Source: Magallana gigas
Lineage: Eukaryota
Assembly (NCBI RefSeq): GCF_963853765.1
Contig: NC_088855.1
Location: 4,588,001 to 4,652,000 of the forward strand
Direction of reading: 5' to 3'
DNA length: 64,000 nt
Shown here piece after piece: positions 28,130 through 44,899 of the stretch (the first letter of the stretch is position 1; every line of letters starts with the position of its first letter). The notes below the pieces were generated by a model that was given only the letters and a program-made list of their open reading frames with translations, was not told the origin of the DNA and ran no database searches. A program made the position numbers and the translations under genes.

Positions 28130-30561
28130 ATGAACGATTCGGTAATTTCATCGGTATCAAAACTGATTCTTTCCTCAGATGAAGTCATTCAGAATTATTT
28201 GACCAACTACTCTATCAAACTGCCAAACGTATTTTTTCTAGCTCTTACTTTCTGTGTGAGTTTTGTGTATTTATGGCGGAAACAATTATTGAATTATCCT
28301 CCGGGACCAATATCGCTGCCATTCATTGGAAATTTGGACTTCTTTAAATCTAAATCACATATACGAATAGCAAATTTAAAAGAAATTTATGGAGATATAT
28401 TCAGTTTGAAAGCAGGTAAATGGGATGTGGTAGTTGTGTGTTCAAAAGAAGGAATCACTGAGGGACTGACAGATCCTGAGAATAACTTTGATGGCAGACC
28501 AGATTTTTTAGCATTCCATAAATTGTTCATGGGAAATAGACAATTAGGTAGGTCAATCATTAGCTGCAGATCTATAGCTCTGGGAGAAACTTTGGTTTGA
28601 CAGAGCATAGAATACTACCAATAATAAAGGTTAATCAGTTGAAACCTAGTGCAAATTTTTTCTATACTGTGAATTGCAAGTTTTTTTTTAATGCAAGACA
28701 CTGTAGCTCTATGGTCTGTTAACCTGAATTTTTAGGTAGAACTACAGATTAATTAATTAATGTTACTCATGCATATCAATATTTTCTTCGTCGTGCGTAT
28801 TATCAAATATTTATATAAATTCCAGGCATTTCAACAGCTGACCTTGATCTGAAAACACAAGTGAAGAAGGAATATATAATACAAAGTCTGATCAGCCATT
28901 GGAATCCTGAGCCGGGGCAAGGCCAGTTATCATATTCAATAGAAAAGTTGATAGTGAAGGAGATCCTCAGTTTAATGTGTTTCTTTATCAATGAAGAAGG
29001 TGCTTTTGATCCCGCAGAGTGCTTTAAATTTGCTCATCTACATATCATGATGTCATTACTTTTTGAGGATGCATATGATGTAGATGATCCCATTACACAT
29101 GAAATATATGATTGTTTAGAAAACAGGAAAGATGCCATGAATGTTCAACTTTATAATTATTTTCCAATTTTGAAAACCATCTTTAAGCAAAAGATAAGCC
29201 AACTTGAGGAGAGGAATGCCCTACTGACCAGATACCACCGAATTCTATTGAACCAGCACAAGGATACTTACAATCCCACTGAATTACGGGACTTGGTTGA
29301 TCAGCTCCTGATTTTTATTGAGACAGGAAATGATCGTGAGTTATTTGACTCCGATGACATGGACAGCCTCATTCTAGAGTTAGCAGGGTGTGGCTTCTCC
29401 TCAGTTCCCGCTCTGTTGACCTGGCTGATGGGATATATGGCAGTTTTTCCCGACATTCAAACAAAAATGCAGGAAGAGATGGACCAAGTTGTTGGCAGGG
29501 ATAGATTTCCAACCTTAGCAGATCAACCCTTCCTTCCCTACACAATGGCTGTGATATTTGAAGTTCAAAGAAATGTTACCTTATTTCCATTTCTGCATCC
29601 TCACAGAGCGATAAAAAACTGTGAATTTTTAGGTATTACTGTGGAATCATTAATTTTTGTGGTGGCTCAATTTTTGTGGAATTCGTGGGTACCTCTCGTC
29701 CACGAATTGACATTATCCAGGAATTACTAAATTAGAATTATTAAGTCATATTTCCTTTTTAGATATAAAACACAAAATTACGTCCCCACGAACATGTCAA
29801 ATTTAGACAATCCATGAAAATTGGCCCCCACAAATTTAAATGATTCCACAGTATATCAATTAATATTTAAATTTTAAATACACTGGATGTATTAATTTTT
29901 TTTTAGTTAGATATATTTATACATTGTACACCTCTTTTTGCATTAAACATGTTATAATTAAGCCTTTTTCAGATTCATGGCAGCCTTTTTCATTAAAATG
30001 ATTAAAAAAATTTCCTGTATTTTTCATTAATAGGTTATAACATCCCAAAGAACACTGTCATGCTGTTTAGTGTTTGGAGTCTTCACCATGACAAGAAACT
30101 CTGGAAAAATCCATCAAAGTTTGACCCATGCAGGTAATAAACATGGTTTCATTATTTATTACTTGTACAACATTTTGCACCCGTAAAACTGTATTGTCGA
30201 CCCTTCAGAAATCAAGGAAAATTGAGTCTCAAAGTGCTGACAAATAATACTTTGTGTACATGTTCCCTGATTCTTTTATATTGGTTTAAGGGCTTTTTGT
30301 AAATATTTGTCCATTTTTGTCAGGTTTCTAGATTCCTGTGGTAGATTGACCATCCCTGAGCACTTTATCCCCTTTGGCCTGGGGGAGAGACGGTGCCCGG
30401 GGGAGGCACTGGTCGATATGGAGGTGTACCTGTTCTTTACACACATCATGCATCAGCTCAATGTCCGGGCAGAGGGAACTATCCTGAATCTGGAGTCGGA
30501 CTACAGACTGGCCATCCAGCCCAAACCTTTCAAGATTAGGATCAGTAGTAGGGAAGATTGA
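28130..30561 (+). CDS. Cytochrome P450, clan 2 (CYP1/CYP17-like layout), 4 exons, 520 aa; the only complete copy
   Basis: Exons 28130-28547, 28826-29632, 30034-30133 and 30324-30561 join in frame. Membrane anchor, PPGP hinge, EVQR (ExxR), FDPCRF (PERF-like) and heme motif FGLGERRCPG are present. Confidence 0.92.
29639..29851. mobile_element. Tc1/mariner-type MITE (TA TSD) just after the P450 exon 2 donor
   Basis: ta|ctgtggaatcatt ... aatgattccacag|ta; same family as 58454-58671 in the opposite orientation. Confidence 0.9.
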
Positions 30562-32473: not shown

Positions 32474-35400
32474 TCAGGTATCCATGGGATACACAGCCGA
32501 CGCTGTCCCTGGCGTGGCGAAGGACAATCCCGCACGTCTCTAAAAATGAACAAAGCACTGATTATAACAAAATCTGTAGGCAGTGTTACATTGTAAAAGG
32601 TTTAGCCTTAATAAAAAGCGACACAGGGAATCATAAATCTATAAATAAGTGCACAATTACCAAAAGGAAAGGAAAGACGCAGTACTTGTGAATCATTCAC
32701 CGGCATCGCGAGGTTAATGGTCGGATGACCGAAATCCAGAACATGCAAAGTTTCCTTACCCTAATTGTGACGTCCTCCTGCTCCTTCGAGCGGGAATCCT
32801 TCCAATGACCGCCTAGTAACTTCTCCGCCTTCTCCTACAAACAGATCATAACATAGTGCAAAAATAACACTTAACGCCTGATTGGAATGCATTCATATTG
32901 CGACGTATAACACTAGGTGTTCCCTACCTCGTATATCTTCAGCTTTGATTGTAGTTCTTTATTTCGTGACACATACTGAAAGAAAACGAATCAATAAAAA
33001 TCATAAAGAACGTTGATAGATTACACGTAAATTACTTCTATATTAAAACCATAAATCGCATGTATTACAGCTAAATTGACTGTATGGAGTATCCTTACTG
33101 TAATGAGCACTAAGGAAACAAAGACGACTAGGAAGAGCCCGTATGCAATGAGGAAGACGAGGAAAGCCCATTTGTCCATTGTCGCTTGTAGGTCATCGTC
33201 GAACCTCGTTATGACCGCGTGCCAGGCTATCACCAGCCAGTTAAAGAACATGTTGGCTAGGATAAACTTGTCCTACAAACATTACTACTTTGAATTTTAC
33301 ATACAAAAACACGTTAATTTATTATTATTAAAAAAATTTGTTACTTATTTAGGAAAAGTCCTTAAAATCAATATTTAGTGACAGACCAGATAGCATACGA
33401 TTTTAAGCTGACACTTGTAAAATTACCGATAAATATAGTATAATATGATTAAACATTTAGAGAATTTACAGCACTGAAACACTGACCAGGCAGGTGTGAT
33501 AGGATATTTTGGGGGAGATTAGCGTTCGTCGTCAGACGGAAGGTGACCGCCGTCAACATGAGAGTTATGGACAGCCCTAACCGGTTCTGAGTTAGGAAAT
33601 GTGGCGAAGGAAGTGACACATATAAGAGTCTGAAACAAAATAAACCTCGTGTTAACCTCAGAAAGATGAGACATAAAAGCTAAGATATACCAAGAAAGTT
33701 AATGAAATTCTTGCCATGATGACGATAACGTTCAAGACGAAGAATCCCGCGCGTCTGACTGCGCAACATACGACGGAAATGCCGGGAAATTTGGTGTTGA
33801 CGTTCCGTTTCTGAGAGAAGACTTTGGATTATGTGTAGGGTACGGAGGCCACGTAGTCACACAGGGACCACTCCTGGACGTCCACGAAGCATGACACATT
33901 GATGGTACTCAGCTCGTCCTTGTCCTCCTGGAACTCCAGATCAGTGGCGGGGAGCTCAGAGGTAATGACCAGGTTCAAATACTGCAAAAACACAAACAGA
34001 AACAAATCATATAGCATAGTTTCTGTCAAACCATTCAGTAGTGTATCGACCTGTACACATGCAGTAAAATACTAAATGCTAAATGGTAACAAACACAACC
34101 AAAAATCACGTTTATTTTTCATAACTATCAGCTTAATTGATGGTTGCGATTTAGAAGATTGATTTCTATATCTGGTACTTGGAAGTTTACGAACTGTAAT
34201 TCATTAACAGGGCAGCACAAATTAAACGCCACATTCTATGATTGCAATAGAGAGGGTATAGTTAATTAAAGTATTTAGCTCTTCCCTGTATTTAAAAAAT
34301 TAGCTAGAAAACATTCTGTTTGGTCATGCCCTGGTTGTGATAGAGAACAATCTGTTTGGTTATGCCCTGATTGTGAAAGAGAACATACTGTTTGGTCATG
34401 CTTTCAGTTTGATAGTGAAAGAGAACATTCTGTTTGGTTATGCCCTGATTGTGATAGAGAACATACTGTTTGGTCATGCCCTGAATGTGATAGAGAACAT
34501 ACTGTTTGGTCATGTCCTGATTGTGATAGAGAACATACTGTTTGGTCAAGTCCTGATTGTGATAGAGAACATACTGTTTGGTCATGCTCTTATTGTGATA
34601 GAGAACATTCTGTTTGGTCATGCTCTTATTGTGATAGAGAACATACTGTTTGGTCATGCTCTTATTGTGATAGAGAACATACTGTTTGGTCATGCTCTTA
34701 TTGTGATAGAGAACATTCTGTTTGGTCATGCCCTGATTGTGATAGAGAACATACTGTTTGGGCATGCTCTTATTGTGAGAGATTATATACCTGATATTGT
34801 TCTTATTGTTATAGAGGATACACTTTTGCACTCTCATTATGTGGTTTATAACAAACCTGGTGATCAAACGGAAAGTCCATCAGCTCTAGCTTCTCCGAGA
34901 ACTGTCCGCTAATTTTTCTTTTCTCCGTAATGAAAGCCTCACCATGGGGGTTAAAATTCAACTCTTTTAATACTTTCTTCTTCTTAGAGTCGATTACATT
35001 CTGAACAGATATTTTGGGACAAGTTCCTGTTTTCCAGATGCTGCAAAAAACGATTTACAAGAAAGAATAGTTATCTGCTTCTTATGATGTATTATATTGT
35101 TAAGCATATTTTTGAAAAAAAAAAATTTGAACTGCACATACTTGACTGTGATCCAATGCCGGTTCCCGCCATCTTGCCTGCACAAAGACATCGGCAAAGT
35201 ATTTCTCCTTGACCATGTCAATCTCCCCCACCTTCAGGAACTCCACGCGGATATAGACCGTTCTCTGTAACATGCAATAAAGAAAAGGTTAAAAAATCAT
35301 AAAGTGTAAACAGGAAGAACGGTAAAGCATGCACATGTAATAAGTCTGTAATCGTTATATCAAGGAAGTGACTATTTTTATCTACGAGACTTACCATGTA

Positions 35401-35559
35401 GCAGAGCAAAACAGTATATTACCAAACCTGAATAAATTTGATTAAAATCATTAAATACTGATGAGTAAACAACACTTTTCTTTACCAAACAGGATTTTAT
35501 CTGATTAAGGAAGTTTGTAAATATTTTGATCAATACAAAAGTCAGATTACCTTTACCAT
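32474..35559 (-). pseudogene. Cys-less pentameric ligand-gated ion channel, copy 1 (disabled)
   Basis: Same nine exons as copies 2 and 3, but with a 14-bp deletion in the loop-A exon (~35020), a premature TAA (~33831), and a 14-bp net deletion in the M1-M2 exon (~33590). Confidence 0.85.
34305..34800. repeat. 36-bp intronic minisatellite, ~14 units
   Basis: Consensus atagagaacatactgtttggtcatgccctgattgtg. Confidence 0.95.
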
Positions 35560-35791: not shown

Positions 35792-38323
35792 ATTTTCCGA
35801 ATCCCCACTCCTCAATTAAAAATAATAATTGGTCAAGACAATTATGGGGCCCTCTAAGGGGACACAGGTAGACTTTACCTGTATATACTTTGGGACACCG
35901 GTAGACTTTACCTGTATATACTTTGGTTCAAAGGTAGACGACATTGTCTTATTTTTAATTTAAAAAAAATAAAAAACTGCAATAAATAGTGATAATGGCT
36001 GCATTTTCCTGACATTATATTAAAAGTACCATATCATTTAATAACCTAAATGTTTCAGTGAAATAAAATAATCATTAAATATTATTAAAAAAAATTAAAT
36101 ACATTTCTTCATTTTTAAAATTACATCTTAACAAAATAAAAATAAAACATTATATCTTAAGGTATAAATTAATATCAGAGATTTTAAATGATGATTATTT
36201 AAATTATGACGGAGATAAAATTATGATAAAAAAATCACTTTCTCAAACAAATCAGTCCAAGCTGTGAATAAATGAATGACATAAGCTTAAATATATTTTA
36301 ATTAATATGTCATAAAACCAAGTAATTGAACATCATTATGGTAAAAAAAATTACTTTGATATTTTTTAAATATTAGTTTTAAAATCAATTACTGTAAAGA
36401 TGTTGAACTGAACTCATCCAAGCTGTAAATAAATGATGTTAAACTGAACTCATCAAAGCTGTAAATAAATGATGTTGAACTGAACTCATCAATGCTGTAA
36501 ATGAACACAAGCTACAGAATTGTATAAAAGAAGGAAAGAATCCAAACATCATTACTTTTCACTCACAATGGCAAATGCACAGATCAACGTTAAGTTCATC
36601 ACCAGCAGACGAGGGGGACGTAATATCGCATTCAATGGCTACATTTACTGGGTAAATCGAAGGACGGACAACAAGATCTTCTGGAGGTGCATTACATCTG
36701 GATGTTTCGCCAGTATCTTAACAGAGAATGACACCCCCAAAGGTTTTGGACGACAGCAACACACCTATGCAGGGGACCACACTGAAGTTGTTGCCAAACA
36801 AATTATGACAGCCATCTCCAGAAGATGTACAGATAAAGTTAGGCCTATCCCCTCCATTTTCAGCGAAGAACTCAACAAACTCCGAGACAACGAATGGGAC
36901 GACACCAGCAGAGATCTCATCGAGAGGCTGCCGACTTTCAACACCGCCAGGTCATCACTCTACAGAGCCCGCAGGAAACAGACACCACCACTTCCAAAGA
37001 CTTCAGCAGACATCAGACTGGAGAGGAAATGGACAGAAACAGAGACGGGACAACCATTCCTTCTACTAGATGACATCTTCCAGAACATCAGGATACTTGC
37101 GTTTGCGACAACAGACAACCTTCAAGACCTCCCTGCCTCCGAGACCTTCTTCTGTGATGGAACCTTCTACACCTGCCCCAGCCTGTTCTACCAGATCTTC
37201 ACCATCCACATCATGACTGACGACCAGATGACGCATGCTGTGTATGCCCTCTTCCAGGAAAGAACCAAGCCACCTACACAAGACTCTTCACTCTCCTTTC
37301 CGACAAGATGAACGACCTCAGCCTACAGTTCTCTCCCACCAGTGCCCTTGCGGACTTCGAAACTGCAGTTCATAACTCCATCAGAGATGTTTTCCCCGGA
37401 ATCACCACCAAAGGATGTTTCTTCCATTTCACACAGGCTGTTTGGCGCAAGGCACAGATCACAGGTTTACAGATCCCCTACAGAGAAGATGACAACGTGA
37501 ATAAACTGATAAGGAGAGCAGCCGTCCTACCCCTAGTTCCTCTAGACAGCATCGAAAACGTGTGGTTCCAAGCCCTGGACGACCGCAATAAAGCCGACCT
37601 GACGGAAGTGACAGAGACCTTTACAGACTTTGTGACAGAACAGTGGGTGAATGGTGACAGACTTATTTGGAATCACTTCGGAACCAATGGACCACGGACC
37701 AATAACAACTTAGAAGCATGGCACGGGAAGCTGAAGAGGATGGCCCTACACGCGCACCCAAACATCTACACTGTCATCAAGATCTTTAAGGACATCCAGA
37801 ACAGCAAAGAAATTCTACAGATCCAGAAACAAGCAGAAGGAACCATTCGTCAACCGACAAAGAAGTACGCGAACATCAAGAGGAGACTGCAGACCCTGAA
37901 GGAGCGATACCATAATCGGCATTATGAATTATGCTTTTTAAAACTTTTTAAATATTTTGAATTGTTTTTTATGTTTTAGTCAACCATGTATTTATAAGTT
38001 AATTATAAAACAGAGCTATGTGTCAAAATAAAAGGAAAATTGTATATAAAATGTTATGCAATTTTAAAACATTATCTTAATGTTTAAAATTATATGTAGA
38101 GCCAATAAATTAAATAAATATATTAAAATTGATTCAATGTTTTCTTTTTATTTATGCAACAATTTTAATTATAAAGACATTCAACATTTAACAAAAAAGA
38201 CAAACTGTTATATTATTTTTCATGAAAACACAGGTAAAGTCTACCTGTGCCCCTTTAGAAGGCCACATAATTGCTTAGTATAATTGAATAATGATAATCG
38301 GGCAGAAGGCGTTCGGAGATGCC
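35792..38323 (+). mobile_element. Mutator-like (MULE) transposon with FLYWCH-MULE transposase pseudogene, copy 1
   Basis: ATG at 36568. FLYWCH-like GYIYWVN...FWRCITSGC...H; DDE core CDGTF / ADFE / NLEAWH plus CFFH. Frameshift ~37250 and a 3' deletion ~37910. Imperfect TIRs: ...caattatggggccctctaaggggacacaggtagactttacctg (left) versus caggtaaagtctacctgtgcccctttagaaggccacataattg...ggcgttcggagatgcc (right). Confidence 0.92.
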
Positions 38324-39521
38324 CAGATGTTTTAGCATTCCATAAATTGTTCATGGGTAATAGACAATTAGGTAGGTCATTCATTAGCTGCAAATCTATA
38401 GCTCTGGGAGAAACTTTGGTTTGACGGAGCATAGAGGACTACCAATTATAAAGATTAATCAGTTGAAAACTAGTCCCAAATTTTTGTATACCTAATAGAA
38501 TTGCAAGTTTTTTGTATGCAAAACACTGTAGTTCTATGGTCTGTTAACCAGAATTTTTAGGTAGAACTACAAATAAATTAATGTTACTCACGCATATCAC
38601 ATTTTTTTGGGTGCTGATCATCAAATATCTAATATATAATTGTCAGGCATTTCAACAGCTGACCTCGATCTGAAAACACAAGTGAAAAAGGAATATATAA
38701 TACAAAGTCTGATCAGCCATTGGAATCCTGAACCAGGGCAAAGACAATTATTATACTCAATAGAAAAGTTGATAGTGAAGGAGATCCTCAGTTTAATGTG
38801 CCTCTTTATCAATGAAGAAGGTGCGTTTGATCCCGCAGAGTACTTTAAATTTGCACATCTACATATCATGATGTCATTACTTTTTGAGGATGCATACGAT
38901 GTAGATGATCCCATTACACATGAAATATATGATTGTTTAGAAAACAGAAAAGATGCCATGAATGTTCAACTTTATGATTATTTTCCAATTTTGAAAACCA
39001 TCTATAATCAAAAGATAAGCCAACTTGAGGAAAGGAATGCCCTATTGACCAGATACCACCGATTTCTGGTGAACCAGCACAAGGATTCTTACAATCCCAC
39101 TGAATTAAGAGACCTTGTAGATCAGCTCCTGATTTTTATTGAGACAGGAAATGATCGTGAGTTATTTGACTCCAATGACATGGACAGCCTCATTCTAGAG
39201 TTAGCAGGGTGTACTTTTGTGTACATGTTCCCTGATTCTTTTATATGGTGGGTTTTTTGCAAATATTTGTCCATTTTTGTCAGGTTTCTAGATTCCAGTG
39301 GTAGATTGACCATCCCTGAGCACTTTATCCCCTTTGGCATGGGGGAGAGGCGGTGCCCGGGGGAGGCACTGGTCGATATGGAGGTGTACCTGTTCTTTAC
39401 ACACATCATGCATCAGCTCAATGTCCGGGCAGAAGGAACTATCCTGAATCTGGAGTCGGACTACAGACTGGCCATCCAGCCCAAACCTTTCAAGATTAGG
39501 ATCAGTAGTAGGGAAGATTGA
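38324..39521 (+). pseudogene. Cytochrome P450 copy 2 (5'-truncated, internal deletion)
   Basis: Only the last ~48 nt of exon 1 (38324-38371) remain. Exon 2 runs from 38647 to 39212, where an ~857-bp deletion removes most of helix I, helix K and exon 3. Exon 4 is 39284-39521. Confidence 0.9.
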
Positions 39522-41200: not shown

Positions 41201-41442
41201 CATCAGCATACATTTTCATTGTTTTGAAGTTTGCGTTTGTGTTTAGCTGTTGACACCAGGTAAAACAATGAAAACATTTCTGACCATGATGTGGTTTTTA
41301 GCAAGTTTTACGTTTTTTTTACCATTCATTTATATCACAACTCTTGGTAATTATGCATGAAAATGTATATATAAAAATAAAAGGAATGTCTTTAATTCAA
41401 TATCACAATTGTATTTGGTGGAGTCCAGACGGAGGCTGTGAT

Positions 41443-44400
41443 TCATGTATCCATGGGATACACAGCCGACGCTGTCCCTGGCGTGGCGTAGGACAATCCC
41501 CCACGTCTCTAAAAATAAACAAAGCACTGATTATAACAAAATCTGTAGGCAGTGTTACATTGTAAAAGGTTTAGCGTTAATAAAAAGCGACACAGGGAAT
41601 CATAAATCTATAAATAAGTGCACAATTACCAAAAGGAACGGAAAGACGCAGTACTTGTGAATCATTCACCGGCATCGCGAGGTTAATGGTCGGATGACCG
41701 AAATCCAGAACATGCAAAGTTTCCTTACCCTAATTGTGACGTCCTCCTGCTCCTTTGAGCGGGAATCCTTCCAATGACCGCCTAGTAACTTCTCCGCCTT
41801 CTCCTACAAACAGATCATGACATAGTGCGAAAATAACACTTAACGCCTGATTGGAATGCATTCATATTGCGACGTATAACACTAGGTGTTCCCTACCTCG
41901 TATATCTTCAGCTTTGATTGTAGTTCGTTATTTCGTAACACATACTGAAAGAAAACGAATCAATAAAAATCATAAAGAACGTTGATAGATTACACGTAAA
42001 TTACTTCTATATAAACACCATAAATCGCATGTATTACAGCTAAATTGACTGTATGGAGTATCCTTACTGTAATGAGCACTAAGGAAACAAAGACGACTAG
42101 GAAGAGCCCGTATGCAATGAGGAAGACGAGGAAGGCCCAGTTGTCCATTGTCGCTTGTAGGTCATCGTCGAACCTCGTTATGACCGCGTGCCAGGCCGTC
42201 ACCAGCCAGTTAAAGAACATGTTGGCCAGGATAAACTTGTCCTACAAACATTACTTCTTTGAATTTTACATACAAAAACACGTTAATTTATTATTATTAA
42301 AAAAGTTTGGTACTTATTTTTGGAAAAGTCATTAGAATCAATATTTATTAACAGAACGATTTTAGGTTGACATAAGAAAAAATTACCAATAAATATAGTT
42401 TTCATAATTAACATTTAGAGAAAATACACCACTAAAACACTGACCAGGCGGGTGTGATAGGATATTTTGGGGAGATTAGCGTTCGTCGTCAGACGGAAGG
42501 TGACCGCCGTCAACATGAGAGTTATGGACAGCCCTAACCGGCTCTCAGTTTTGTCGCAACTGACTGCGAATGTGGCGAAGGAAGTGACACATATAAGAGT
42601 CTGAAACAAAATAAACCTCGTTTAACCTCAGAAATTTGAGACATAAAAGCTAAGATATACCAAGAAAGTTATTGAAATTCTTGCCATGATGACGATAACG
42701 TTCCAGACGAAGAATCCCGCGCGTCTGACTGCGCAACATCCGACGGAAATGCCGGGAAATTTGGTGTTGACGTTCCGTTTCCGTGAGAAGACTTTTGATT
42801 CTGTGTAGGGTACGAAGGCCACGTAGTCACACAGGGACCACTCCTGGACGTCCACGAAGCAGGACACATTGATGGTACTCAGCTCGTCCTTGTCCTCCTG
42901 GAACTCCAGATCAGTGGCGGGGAGCTCAGAGGTAATGATCAGGTTCAAATACTGCAAAAAACACAAACAGAAACAAATCAAATAGCATAGGTTGTGTCAA
43001 ACCATTCAGTAGTGTATCGACCTTTACACATGCAGTAAAATACTAAATGCTAAATGGTAACAAACACAACCAAAAAATCACATTGCAACGTTTATTTTTC
43101 ATAAAAATCAGCTTAATTGATGGTTCCGATTTAGAAGATTGATTTCTATATCTTGTACTTGGAAATTTACGAACTGTAATTCATTAACAGGGCAGCACTA
43201 ATCAAACGCCACATTCTATGATTGCAATAGAGAGGGCATAGTTGAATAAAGTATTTAGTTCTTCCCTGAATTTAAAAGATAAGCTAGAAAACATTCCGTT
43301 TGGTCATGCCCTGGTTGTGATAGAGAACATTCTGTTTGGTTATGCCCTGATTGTGAAAGAGAACATACTGTTTGGTCATGCTCTAATACTGAAAGAGAAC
43401 ATTCTGTTTGGTCATGCCCTGATTGTGATAGAGAGCATACTGTTTGGTCATGCCCTAATTGTGATAGAGAGCATACTGTTTGGTCATGCCCTTATTGTGA
43501 TAGAGAGCATACTGTTTGGTCATGCCCTGATTGTGATAGAAAACATACTGTTTGGCCATGCACTGATTACTGTTTTGGCATGCCCTGATTGTGATAGAGA
43601 ACATTCTGTTTGGTTATGCCCTGATTGTGAAAGAGAACATACTGTTTGGTCATGCTGTAATAGTGAAAGAGAACATTCTGTTTGGTCATGCCCTGATTGT
43701 GATAGAGAACATTCTGTTTGGCCATGCCCTGATTGTGATAGAGAGCATACTGTTTGGTCATGCCCTGATTGTGATAGAGAACATATGATTTGGTTGTACC
43801 CTGATTGTGATAGAAAATAAACTGTTTGGTCATGCCCTGAATGTGATAGAGAACATACTGTTTTGTCTTGCCTTAATTGTGATAGAGAACATACTGTTTG
43901 GTCATGCCCTGATTGTGATAGAGAACAAACTGTTTGGTCATGCTCTGATTGTGACATGGAACAAACTGTTTTGTCATGCCCTAATTGTGATAGAGAACAT
44001 ACTGTTTGGTCATGCTCTGATTGTGATAGAGAACATTCTGTTTGGTCATGCCCTGATCGTGATGGAGAACATACTGATTGGTGTGCTCTTATTGTGAGAG
44101 ATTACATACCTGATATTGCTCTTATTGTTATAGAGGATATACCTTTGCATTCTCATTATGTTGTTAATAACAAACCTGGTGATCAAACGGAAAGTCCATC
44201 AGCTCTAGCTTCTCCGAGAAATGTCCGCTAATTTTTCTTTTCTCCGTAATGAAAGCCTCACCATGGAGGTTAAAATTCAACTCTTTTAATACTTTCTTCT
44301 TCTTAGAGTCGATTACATTCTGAACAGATATTTTGGGACCCCAGTAGTTGTCCAAGTTCCTGTTTTCCAGATGCTGCAAAAAACGATTTACAAGAAAGAA

Positions 44401-44899
44401 TAGTTATGTGCTTCTTATGATGTATTATATTATTGAGCATATTTTTGAGAAAAAAAATTTGAACTGCATATACTTGACTGTGATCCAATGCCGGTTCCCG
44501 CCATCTTGCCTGCACGAAGACATCGGCAAAGTAATTCTCCTTGACCGTGTCAATCTCCCCCACCTTCAGGAACACCACGCGGATATAGACCGTTCTCTGT
44601 AACATGCAATAAAGAAAAGGTTAAAAAATCATAAAGTGTAAACAGGGAGAACGGTAAAGCATGTACATGTAATACGTCTGTCATCGTTATAACAAGGAAG
44701 TGACTATTTGTATCTACGAGACATATATATTTACATTGTAGTAGAGCAAAACAGTATATTACCAAACCTGAATAAATTTGATTAAAATCATTAAATACTG
44801 ATGAGTAAACAACATTTTTCTTTACCAAACAGGATTTTATCTGATTAAGGAAGTTTGTAAATATTTTGATCAATACAAAAGTCAGATTACCTTTACCAT
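41443..44899 (-). CDS. Cys-less (Pro-loop) pentameric ligand-gated ion channel subunit, copy 2, apparently intact, ~371 aa
   Basis: Exons 44891-44899 (ATG GTA AAG), 44474-44596, 44176-44373, 42685-42951 (GC donor), 42445-42600, 42068-42241, 41897-41944, 41729-41803 and 41443-41508, all phase 0 and stop-free. Ligand-domain motifs IDTVKENYFADVFVQARWREP, YWGPKISVQN and LELMDFPFDHQ; four hydrophobic segments with M2 ESRLGLSITLMLTAVTF and M2-M3 LPKISY. The first and last small exons are less certain. Confidence 0.85.
43284..44120. repeat. 36-bp intronic minisatellite, ~23 units
   Basis: Same consensus as 34305-34800. Confidence 0.95.

What the first reader, a model, noticed from the sequence alone, without database searches (positions are those of the whole stretch)
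42685..44373. Both Cys-loop cysteines are absent: GLIC/ELIC-like Pro-loop receptor in an animal genome
Seen: the signature loop reads GHFSEKLELMDFPFDHQ|YLNL. Aligned to C-x6-FPFD-x-Q-x-C, the two Cys positions are Glu and Leu in all three copies, while the invariant FPFD proline is kept. Established: this is the pattern of prokaryotic GLIC/ELIC and of a Cys-less clade reported in some invertebrates. To my knowledge the ligands of the animal members are uncharacterised. The family itself is therefore not new, but this locus gives two intact paralogues and one dead one for comparison.
Basis: partly seen in the sequence, partly recalled or inferred. Interest (0 to 1): 0.7.

Follow-up and report, generated by a model that had tools for sequence, protein, structure and literature searches.

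The report
Oyster Cys-less pentameric channel gene cluster
An oyster genome window holds three tandem copies (two intact, one dead) of a neurotransmitter-receptor-like ion channel gene from an already described invertebrate family that lacks the usual disulfide loop; the whole family also lacks a secretion signal, which suggests its ligand-binding domain may face the inside of the cell.

Summary
On the minus strand, exon B (44176-44373) ends ...FSEKLELMDFPFDHQ and exon C (42685-42951) starts YLNL. The two Cys-loop positions are Glu and Leu in all three copies.

I built the full 9-exon, 371-aa gene. Copy 2 (41443-44899) and copy 3 (51849-56327) are intact. Copy 1 (32474-35559) is a pseudogene. 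A fourth, better conserved copy lies about 14 kb beyond the window. RNA contigs show copy 2 spliced exactly as modelled, with no extra exon that would restore the cysteines.

The protein belongs to the published spiralian "Cys-less Pro-loop receptor" clade (Jaiteh 2016; Johnson 2023). E and L/I at the two positions are fixed in 193 and 191 of 194 family loops. The family profile scores highest on a bacterial clade (111-157 bits) and ELIC (104). It scores lower on GABA-A (94) and the oyster's own nAChR-like genes (19-52). A tree places it with the bacteria, outside the oyster's Cys-loop receptors.

Beyond the finding, the family has no signal peptide, a 13-residue acidic M3-M4 loop and a long K/R-rich tail. 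Its bacterial sisters show the opposite pattern. I infer a cytosol-facing ligand-binding domain (about 0.6). Another first-stage note on this stretch raised the same idea.

The parts
44891..44899 (-). Copy 2, coding part of exon 0 (ATG GTA AAG, then a GT donor). A duplicated candidate lies at 45281-45289.
   Evidence: Pattern search. The transcript L032 starts MVK|RTVY, has three in-frame stops in its 5'UTR, and maps to this exon in every copy.
44474..44596 (-). Copy 2 exon A: beta1-beta2 (RTVYIRVVFLKVGEIDTVKE...DHSQ).
   Evidence: Acceptor TTACAG, donor GTATAT.
44176..44373 (-). Copy 2 exon B: loop A to the first half of the Pro-loop, ending FSEKLELMDFPFDHQ. Glu occupies the first Cys position.
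   Evidence: Neur_chan_LBD profile positions 81-138. The RNA loose end joins it directly to exon C.
43285..44109 (.). 36-bp minisatellite inside the intron between exons B and C.
   Evidence: Its length differs between copies (34305-34782, 54145-55532).
42685..42951 (-). Copy 2 exon C: second half of the Pro-loop (YLNL; Leu at the second Cys position), beta7-beta10, pre-M1 RR and the start of M1.
   Evidence: (184 relatives found with this exon).
42601..42684 (-). GC-AG intron between exons C and D.
   Evidence: GCAAGA donor in all four copies. RNA contigs in three runs run from 42600 straight to 42685 (loose ends).
42445..42600 (-). Copy 2 exon D: rest of M1, the M1-M2 loop with the derived patch SCDKTESRLG, M2, and LPKISYHTRL.
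   Evidence: (Neur_chan_memb). RNA contigs are identical to copy 2 across the patch.
42068..42241 (-). Copy 2 exon E: M3, the 11-residue acidic M3-M4 loop and M4.
   Evidence: Spliced RNA joints at 42241|42445 and 41944|42068.
41897..41944 (-). Copy 2 exon F: start of the post-M4 tail (YVLRNNELQSKLKIYE).
41729..41803 (-). Copy 2 exon G: conserved tail motif EKAEKLLGGHWK...
41443..41508 (-). Copy 2 exon H and the TGA stop codon.
   Evidence: RNA joint 41508|41729.
51849..56327 (-). Copy 3, intact gene of 373 aa. Exons: 56319-56327, 55894-56016, 55599-55796, 53597-53863, 53355-53510, 52476-52655, 52311-52358, 52143-52217, 51849-51914.
   Evidence: Same splice sites as copy 2. Its transcription was not tested.
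32474..35559 (-). Copy 1, pseudogene. Exons: 35551-35559, 35142-35264, 34857-35040 (14-bp deletion), 33715-33981 (in-frame stop), 33487-33629 (14-bp deletion plus 1-bp insertion), 33099-33272, 32928-32975, 32760-32834, 32474-32539.

Best explanation
The window carries a tandem array of roughly 10-11 kb duplicated units. [quoted passage not shown] The protein has an N-terminal beta-sandwich, the M1-M4 helices and a conserved FPFD Pro-loop, with Glu and Leu where Cys-loop receptors have their two cysteines.

Shown: the genes belong to the already described spiralian (lophotrochozoan) Cys-less Pro-loop receptor clade. The Cys-less state is fixed across the whole family, so it is not a recent loss. 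The family is nearer to bacterial ELIC-like channels than to the animal's own Cys-loop receptors. Copy 2 is transcribed and correctly spliced. Copy 3 is intact. Copy 1 is a pseudogene.

Inferred mechanism: five subunits form a channel gated by an unknown ligand that binds at subunit interfaces of the beta-sandwich. An invariant E-W and a nearly invariant D-x-Q lie in the loop-B region. The Pro-loop would be held by packing, as in ELIC and GLIC, instead of by a disulfide.

Further inference, probability about 0.6: the family has no signal peptide, and its positive charges sit on the ligand-binding-domain side of the membrane. The ligand-binding domain and the long K/R-rich tail would therefore stay in the cytosol, and the channel would sense an intracellular ligand. 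That would also explain why a disulfide is absent.

The confidence figure given refers to the identity and gene-model claims, not to the topology.
For: Gene model. The C. virginica RefSeq orthologue P0158 is 87% identical and collinear. Transcript L032 (= P0157) has the same nine exons. RNA contigs from three runs in three studies cover only the exons, show every joint, and are identical to copy 2 in exons D and E.

Fold. The AF2 model has pLDDT 83 and pTM 0.74, with a beta-sandwich followed by four helices. Foldseek top hits are GABA-A, ELIC, GLIC chimeras and GlyR.

Family. 184 relatives in the representatives search and 166 in the profile search; every named one among those listed is from Mollusca, Annelida, Nemertea, Brachiopoda or Platyhelminthes. 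Glu occupies the first Cys position in 193/194 loops and Leu or Ile the second in 191/194. No listed protein has a canonical Cys-loop.

Affinity. Family-profile bit scores are 111-157 for the bacterial clade, 104 for ELIC, 94 for GABA-A gamma2, 84 for GlyR and 19-52 for oyster nAChR-like genes. The tree is ((anionic, cationic), (bacteria, family)) with the central branch at 95/89. The family is monophyletic at 100/100. Forcing family plus anionic into one clade costs 7.75 lnL, p-AU 0.042.

Topology. Four of five transcripts from different members have an in-frame stop upstream of the ATG. Of 127 full-length members whose N-terminal extension was long enough to score, only 3 show any hydrophobic N-terminal stretch (136 begin with Met). 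Mean K+R is 9.5 on the LBD side against 2.2 on the other side, larger on the LBD side in 140/140. The M3-M4 loop has a median of 13 aa and is acidic. The tail has a median of 49 aa, with 5.3 K+R in its first 15 residues. The bacterial sister clade has signal peptides (113/123), a K/R-rich M3-M4 loop (4.0) and a 2-aa tail. Oyster nAChR-like ORFs mostly show an N-terminal hydrophobic stretch in the signal-peptide position and all have long M3-M4 loops. The one conserved LBD cysteine (77%) has no conserved partner.
Against: No experiment on any member shows channel activity, a ligand or membrane orientation; the topology rests on sequence rules only. Canonical pLGICs also carry 2-4 K/R just before M1, so that flank is not diagnostic.

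The tree has only two partial anionic sequences, assembled by me from oyster exons. It has no GLIC, ELIC or protist sequences. The bacterial sample was chosen by similarity to the family. Long branches meet, and the AU rejection is marginal (p 0.042).

Jaiteh et al. found eukaryotic pLGICs monophyletic, which differs from my bacteria-plus-family grouping.

Copies 2 and 3 have dN/dS 0.89 between them and changes at near-invariant pore residues (N219S, Q222G). They may be losing function even though copy 2 is expressed.
Confidence: 0.88

Rival explanations
1. The topology is canonical. Despite having no cleavable signal peptide, the beta-sandwich is translocated and faces outside (or an organelle lumen). 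The channel would then be an ordinary extracellular-ligand receptor, like ELIC or GABA-A, that merely lost its disulfide.
For: All characterised pLGICs have this orientation, and the fold is fully conserved. Canonical receptors also carry K/R before M1. According to PMC9874803, planarian homologues are expressed in mechanosensory neurons and their knock-down gives neural phenotypes, which fits a surface receptor.
Against: No signal peptide in at least 97% of the 127 members whose N-terminal extension could be scored, with the N-terminus closed off by upstream stops in 4 of 5 transcripts examined. A folded 190-aa domain sits ahead of the first TM helix, preceded by up to 328 aa of hydrophilic sequence. 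By established knowledge of signal-anchor insertion, such a domain is not expected to cross the membrane. The charge bias is reversed relative to the bacterial sister clade in 137/140 members against 126/131 bacterial sequences.
Confidence: 0.35
2. The family is a secondary Cys-less offshoot of a conventional anionic Cys-loop subfamily, as nematode lgc-34 and the Dirofilaria channel are.
For: Automatic names call many members GABA or glycine receptor-like. GABA-A and GlyR are the best eukaryotic solved-structure matches.
Against: E and L/I at the two positions are fixed across five phyla. Old paralogue groups each mix molluscs, annelids, nemerteans, flatworms and a brachiopod. ELIC and the bacterial clade score higher than any Cys-loop receptor. 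The two oyster anionic genes group with the cationic ones and away from the family (AU p 0.042). There is no second Cys pair in loop C. Published trees reach the same conclusion (PMC4795631, PMC9874803).
Confidence: 0.04
3. The two intact copies in the window are redundant young duplicates drifting towards pseudogenes. Only the fourth copy, outside the window, carries the function.
For: dN/dS is 0.89 between copies 2 and 3, against 0.08 between copy 4 and its transcript. About 11 substitutions cluster within 27 nt in the M1-M2 loop, changing the nearly invariant N219 and Q222. Neighbouring copy 1 is already dead.
Against: All nine exons, the splice sites and the reading frames are intact in both copies. 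Copy 2 mRNA is present and spliced in three RNA runs. The patch puts a Glu at -2', which flatworm and nemertean members also have, so it could be a change of ion selectivity and not decay. The substitution counts are small (8 synonymous, 25 non-synonymous).
Confidence: 0.3
4. The spiralian family arose by horizontal transfer of a bacterial pLGIC gene into an early spiralian ancestor. Introns were then gained, the signal peptide was lost and the tail was added.
For: Bacterial proteins from Acidobacteriota, Desulfobacterota, Myxococcota, Lentisphaerota and Pseudomonadota MAGs are 23-32% identical over about 290 aa and share LPKISYLTxLD. They group with the family in the tree.
Against: The family is sister to the sampled bacterial clade, not nested within it. 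A language-model look-alike search points to rotifer, xenacoelomorph and diatom clusters (a lead only). Jaiteh et al. tie the clade to protist Cys-less channels, so vertical descent from an old eukaryotic Cys-less lineage is equally open.
Confidence: 0.25

Closest known systems
Lophotrochozoan 'Cys-less Pro-loop receptor' clade (Jaiteh, Taly & Henin 2016, PMC4795631; schistosome Cys-less LGICs, Johnson et al. 2023, PMC9874803)
   Same: Both Cys-loop cysteines are absent and FPxD is kept. There is no second Cys-loop. The taxa match (molluscs, annelids, flatworms). The window proteins sit inside this family in my tree, with Schistosoma, Lottia and Capitella members.
   Different: Nothing excludes membership. 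The oyster copies 2 and 3 carry a derived M1-M2 loop. The papers do not discuss the missing signal peptide, the short acidic M3-M4 loop or the K/R-rich tail; full-text searches for these terms found nothing.
ELIC (Dickeya/Erwinia ligand-gated ion channel) and GLIC
   Same: ELIC is the best solved-structure sequence match (104 bits). Shared features: Cys-less Pro-loop with a polar then a hydrophobic residue, no N-terminal helix, very short M3-M4 loop, and a similar M2 start (RLQ.SFTL.LT).
   Different: ELIC and GLIC are bacterial and carry a signal peptide with a periplasmic LBD (established knowledge, not tested here), and they have almost no tail after M4. The oyster protein has introns, no signal peptide, an acidic M3-M4 loop and a roughly 60-aa basic tail.
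Uncharacterised bacterial pLGIC clade with the LPKISYLTxLD motif (MAGs of Acidobacteriota, Desulfobacterota and others; more than 1,400 metagenomic proteins)
   Same: Highest profile scores (111-157 bits), 23-32% identity, the same M2-M3 motif, and sister position in the tree.
   Different: They have signal peptides, Q and F at the two Cys positions, a K/R-rich M3-M4 loop and a 2-aa tail.
Anionic Cys-loop receptors (GABA-A, GlyR, GluCl)
   Same: Same overall fold at TM 0.6-0.7, and they are the best eukaryotic matches. They share an LPK/R.SY motif after M2.
   Different: They have the Cys-loop disulfide, a signal peptide, an N-terminal helix, a PAR selectivity motif and a long M3-M4 loop. They group apart from the family in the tree.
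Nematode secondary Cys-less channels (C. elegans lgc-34, Dirofilaria immitis Q70GM3)
   Same: They also lack the first Cys-loop cysteines.
   Different: According to PMC4795631 and PMC9874803 they sit inside the anionic Cys-loop clade and keep the second Cys pair. The oyster family has neither feature. I did not compare the sequences here.

Membership tests
Pentameric ligand-gated ion channel (Pro-loop receptor) superfamily | N-terminal beta-sandwich ligand-binding domain (Pfam PF02931) | tested here: met
   Exons A and B hit PF02931 below the cut-off, as expected for fragments. The full-length orthologues P0157 and P0158 carry PF02931 in precomputed annotation. The AF2 model has strands over residues 4-186.
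Pentameric ligand-gated ion channel (Pro-loop receptor) superfamily | Four transmembrane helices M1-M4 after the beta-sandwich (PF02932) | tested here: met
   Exon D hits PF02932. Model helices are 189-211, 217-241, 250-275 and 279-334. Foldseek aligns about 320 columns to GABA-A, ELIC and GlyR.
Pentameric ligand-gated ion channel (Pro-loop receptor) superfamily | Conserved F/YPxD proline loop between beta6 and beta7 | tested here: met
   FPFD is present in all copies. F105, P106, F107, D108 and Q110 are invariant in the 30-sequence alignment.
Pentameric ligand-gated ion channel (Pro-loop receptor) superfamily | Assembly as a pentamer and ligand-gated ion conduction | not testable with these tools
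   A homopentamer exceeds the size limit of the complex predictor. No electrophysiology exists for any member according to PMC9874803.
Cys-loop receptors in the strict sense | Two cysteines 13 residues apart that close the beta6-beta7 loop | tested here: not met
   Glu and Leu occupy these positions. None of the 417 collected relatives matches C-x6-[FYW]Px[DE]-x3-C.
Spiralian Cys-less Pro-loop receptor clade | Groups with lophotrochozoan Cys-less sequences, apart from anionic and cationic Cys-loop receptors | tested here: met
   The family is monophyletic at 98/98 and 100/100 and includes Schistosoma, Lottia, Capitella and Lingula members. The oyster anionic and cationic genes lie on the other side of a 95/89 branch.
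Spiralian Cys-less Pro-loop receptor clade | No second (loop C) Cys pair | tested here: met
   Only one LBD cysteine column is conserved (residue 182, 77%), and it has no partner column.
Prokaryotic ELIC/GLIC-type channels | Signal peptide with a periplasmic ligand-binding domain | tested here: not met
   The protein starts MVK directly before beta1, with stop codons in the 5'UTR. The family lacks hydrophobic N-termini, whereas the bacterial relatives have them.
Prokaryotic ELIC/GLIC-type channels | Short M3-M4 linker and no N-terminal helix | tested here: met
   The M3-M4 loop is 11-13 aa. The first strand starts at residue 4.

The most novel reading that the evidence does not exclude
The whole spiralian Cys-less family, these oyster genes included, is inserted upside-down relative to every characterised pentameric ligand-gated channel. 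With no signal peptide, the beta-sandwich 'extracellular' domain and the basic C-terminal tail stay in the cytosol, and only the short acidic loops face outside or into a lumen. The channel would then be gated by an intracellular ligand. Loss of the Cys-loop disulfide would follow from living in a reducing compartment.
Probability: 0.55. Interest if true: 0.85.

Novelty: new member of a known kind. Interest (0 to 1): 0.55.

Why it matters
The finding as given is a correct recognition of a family that is published but functionally unknown. No ligand, ion selectivity, structure or membrane orientation has been reported for any animal member.

The locus offers a natural comparison series:
- a conserved parent copy just outside the window;
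- two young intact copies with a rewritten selectivity-filter loop, one of them shown to be expressed;
- one pseudogene.

The larger point is the family-wide pattern: no signal peptide, reversed charge bias and a basic tail. It is the mirror image of the closest bacterial relatives. If it means a cytosol-facing ligand-binding domain, this would be, to my knowledge, the first pentameric ligand-gated channel with inverted topology. It would also give a simple reason for the missing disulfide. Because the family is present in schistosomes and absent from vertebrates, it has already been proposed as an anthelmintic target (PMC9874803). The orientation of the ligand site bears directly on that idea.

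Tried and rejected
- Single exons against solved structures by phmmer gave only chance hits. The family profile was needed.
- I first took the ATG at 44605 (MLQRTVY) as the start codon. I rejected it when the transcript showed an upstream 9-nt coding exon (MVK) spliced to the TTACAG acceptor.
- I first read exon E through to a stop at 41993. I rejected this after the orthologue alignment and RNA joints showed a GT donor at 42067 and three more exons.
- An extra exon restoring the cysteines is rejected.
- A recent or secondary loss within a Cys-loop subfamily is rejected.
- I tried to bring GLIC, ELIC, vertebrate and protist sequences into the tree. Profile and bacterial-query searches returned only the two clades themselves among the 120 rows listed. 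No tool delivers solved-structure sequences as usable records. I therefore assembled two partial anionic genes from oyster exons found by a DNA pattern.
- The look-up of sequencing runs was unreachable three times before it answered.
The junction was read from loose ends instead.
- I did not attempt a pentamer prediction because of the size limit.
- Literature searches for an inverted or signal-peptide-less pLGIC found nothing. This is absence in the held library only.
Full report
**Observation**

The gene lies on the minus strand. Exon B (44176-44373) translates to HLENRN...GHFSEKLELMDFPFDHQ. Exon C (42685-42951) translates to YLNLIITSE...VIVIM. The finding's coordinates are the outer ends of these two exons.

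Aligned to the Cys-loop template, the first cysteine position is Glu and the second is Leu, while FPFD is kept. The motif occurs three times in the six-frame translation of the window, once per copy, at 34874, 44193 and 55616.

A self-comparison shows three tandem units of about 10-11 kb that are 86-94% identical.

**Gene model**

I used the Crassostrea virginica RefSeq orthologue P0158 (87% identical) as a guide and inspected the splice sites. Copy 2 has nine exons:
- a 9-nt coding start ATG GTA AAG at 44891-44899;
- 44474-44596, 44176-44373, 42685-42951, 42445-42600, 42068-42241, 41897-41944, 41729-41803;
- 41443-41508, which includes the stop.

The product is 371 aa. The intron after exon C has a GC donor in every copy.

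Copy 3 (51849-56327) is intact at 373 aa. Copy 1 (32474-35559) has a 14-bp deletion in exon B, a stop in exon C, and a 14-bp deletion plus a 1-bp insertion in exon D.

The whole-genome search placed the window at contig 3:4588001-4652000 of a 564-Mb oyster assembly. It also found a fourth copy at about window-equivalent 78.4-82.2 kb.

**RNA evidence**

A public transcript contig (L032, which encodes P0157) maps to copy 4 at 96-100% per exon, with exactly these nine exons. It has three in-frame stops 12-14 codons upstream of the ATG.

I laid RNA contigs from three runs in three studies on 41400-42960. They cover only the exons. They give joints at 41508|41729, 41803|41897, 41944|42068 and 42241|42445. 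Their loose ends run from 42600 to 42685 (the GC-AG intron) and from 42951 to 44176.

The contigs over exons D and E have no differences from copy 2. This includes its private substitution patch and its 6-nt deletion. Copy 2 is therefore transcribed and spliced. No extra exon lies between FPFDHQ and YLNL.

**What it is**

Individual exons hit Pfam Neur_chan_LBD and Neur_chan_memb only weakly. An exhaustive search with exon C found 184 relatives. Searches with a full-length relative and with a 30-sequence alignment found the family in bivalves, gastropods, a chiton, annelids, nemerteans, a brachiopod and flatworms including Schistosoma.

This is the Cys-less clade of Jaiteh, Taly and Henin (PMC4795631) and of Johnson et al. 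(PMC9874803). Both papers state that ligands and function are unknown. The second cites planarian RNAi phenotypes.

An AF2 model of P0157 (pLDDT 83, pTM 0.74) shows the beta-sandwich plus four helices. It matches GABA-A, ELIC, GLIC chimeras and GlyR at TM 0.6-0.78.

**Primary or secondary loss of the cysteines**

- In 194 family Pro-loops, the first position is Glu in 193 and the second is Leu or Ile in 191. None of the collected proteins has a canonical Cys-loop.
- The family profile scores 104 bits on ELIC, 94 on GABA-A gamma2 and 84 on GlyR.
- A scan of prokaryotic genomes found relatives in Acidobacteriota, Desulfobacterota, Myxococcota, Lentisphaerota and Pseudomonadota MAGs. They are 23-32% identical and share LPKISYLTxLD. 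They belong to a clade of more than 1,400 metagenomic proteins.
- That bacterial clade scores 111-157 bits. The oyster's own intronless nAChR-like genes score 19-52.
- A maximum-likelihood tree gives three clean clades. Old paralogue groups within the family mix phyla.
- After I added two partial anionic-type genes assembled from oyster exons, the tree is ((anionic, cationic), (bacteria, family)). The central branch has 95/89 support and the family 100/100.
- Holding family and anionic together costs 7.75 log-likelihood units, p-AU 0.042.

The sampling is thin and long branches meet. I therefore read this as 'not nested in a Cys-loop subfamily', not as proof of bacterial origin.

**Features beyond the finding**

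The protein starts MVK immediately before beta1. Four of five transcripts from different members have upstream in-frame stops. The fifth has only acidic hydrophilic sequence upstream.

Across 136 full-length members that begin with Met, the sequence before beta1 has a median of 53 aa (range 3-328). Only 3 of the 127 long enough to score show any hydrophobic stretch, and those look like mispredictions.

Mean K+R counts in the family:

| Segment | Mean K+R | Note |
|---|---|---|
| Before M1 (15 aa) | 3.1 | |
| M1-M2 loop | 0.8 | |
| M2-M3 loop | 1.1 | |
| M3-M4 loop | 1.4 | median 13 aa, D+E 2.9 |
| First 15 residues after M4 | 5.3 | tail median 49 aa |

The LBD side exceeds the other side in 140 of 140 members.

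The bacterial sister clade shows the opposite pattern:
- a signal-peptide-like N-terminus in 113 of 123;
- 4.0 K+R in a 17-aa M3-M4 loop;
- a 2-aa tail;
- more K+R on the cytoplasmic side in 126 of 131 (pre-M1 flank left out).

Oyster nAChR-like ORFs mostly show an N-terminal hydrophobic stretch where a signal peptide would sit, and all have M3-M4 loops of 54-157 aa and tails of 6-15 aa. The only conserved cysteine of the family's beta-sandwich has no conserved partner.

The positive-inside rule, and the rule that a long folded domain ahead of the first TM helix stays cytosolic, are both established knowledge. By these rules the predicted orientation is N-in and C-in, with the ligand-binding domain in the cytosol.

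This is an inference and I put it at about 0.55-0.6. I found no paper in the held library that mentions it. Another first-stage note on this stretch raised the same idea.

**State of the window copies**

dN/dS values:

| Comparison | dN/dS |
|---|---|
| Copy 4 vs transcript | 0.08 |
| Copy 2 vs copy 4 | 0.29 |
| Copy 3 vs copy 4 | 0.40 |
| Copy 2 vs copy 3 | 0.89 |

Copies 2 and 3 share a dense patch of about 11 substitutions in 27 nt. It turns the conserved SRKLPQNRLQ into SCDKTESRLG in copy 2 and GRDKPESRLG in copy 3. This changes the nearly invariant N219 and Q222 and puts a Glu at -2'. This could be relaxed constraint or a shift in ion selectivity. The data do not decide between them.

**Context**

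Each duplicated unit also carries, on the plus strand, cytochrome P450 exons and a FLYWCH/MULE transposase-like ORF.

**Verdict**

The family is known, so the locus is a new member of a known kind. Its main value is as an entry point to an uncharacterised channel family whose sequence features point to an unusual membrane orientation.

Noticed in passing
window-equivalent 78410-82206 (G000:C3:4666410-4670206; loci L013, L014): A fourth copy of the gene lies just outside the window. It keeps the ancestral M1-M2 loop SRKLPQNRLQ. It is the copy matched by the public transcript P0157/L032 and is under strong purifying selection (dN/dS 0.08).
   Followed up: yes
46626-47654 (+), 57627-58502 (+), 36520-37979 (+): Each duplicated unit carries a FLYWCH zinc-finger / MULE transposase-like ORF between the channel gene and the next unit. 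The copy at 36520-37979 is split into two frames.
   Followed up: partly
28130-29730, 38640-39521, 48527-49324, 59743-60156 (+): Cytochrome P450 exons recur once per duplicated unit, so the array duplicates a P450 gene together with the channel gene. The copy at 48.5-49.3 kb is interrupted by the N gap at 49170-49303.
   Followed up: partly
34305-34782, 43285-44109, 54145-55532: A 36-bp minisatellite (unit TAGAGAACATACTGTTTGGTCATGCCCTGATTGTGA) sits in the intron that splits the Pro-loop. It has about 13, 23 and 38 repeats in copies 1, 2 and 3. It creates long spurious ORFs on both strands.
   Followed up: partly
44838-45132 vs 45228-45517; 56331-56525: The segment holding the 5'UTR and the 9-nt first coding exon is itself duplicated in copy 2, giving two candidate start exons at 44899 and 45289. 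Copy 3 has a 98-bp tandem duplication nearby. Which start exon copy 2 uses was not determined.
   Followed up: no
42532-42561 (copy 2), about 53442-53471 (copy 3; derived by offset from copy 2, not computed separately): About 11 substitutions fall within 27 nt of exon D, at the selectivity-filter end of M2. Copies 2 and 3 share them, and copy 1 shares some. This is far denser than elsewhere in the gene. It may reflect a templated or multi-nucleotide mutation, or selection on the pore.
   Followed up: partly
L033-L044 (bacterial MAG contigs); P0298-P0417: A large uncharacterised bacterial pLGIC clade (over 1,400 metagenomic proteins at E<=0.001) shares the M2-M3 motif LPKISYLTxLD with the spiralian family. 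It is closer to the family than ELIC is.
   Followed up: partly
protein P0005 (public database, 904 aa): A predicted protein consists of many tandem repeats of a peptide (KLPGISVVVCAVRTTVF...) that resembles the beta10/pre-M1 piece of exon C. It looks like a satellite derived from a fragment of this gene family in some genome.
   Followed up: no
G000:C2:53270281-53274201 and 53284401-53286264: Two tandem anionic-type Cys-loop receptor genes sit here: one GABA-A-beta-like with ARVALGITTVLTMTT, and a divergent neighbour. I used them as comparators. The oyster also has many intronless nAChR-like genes in tandem clusters.
   Followed up: partly
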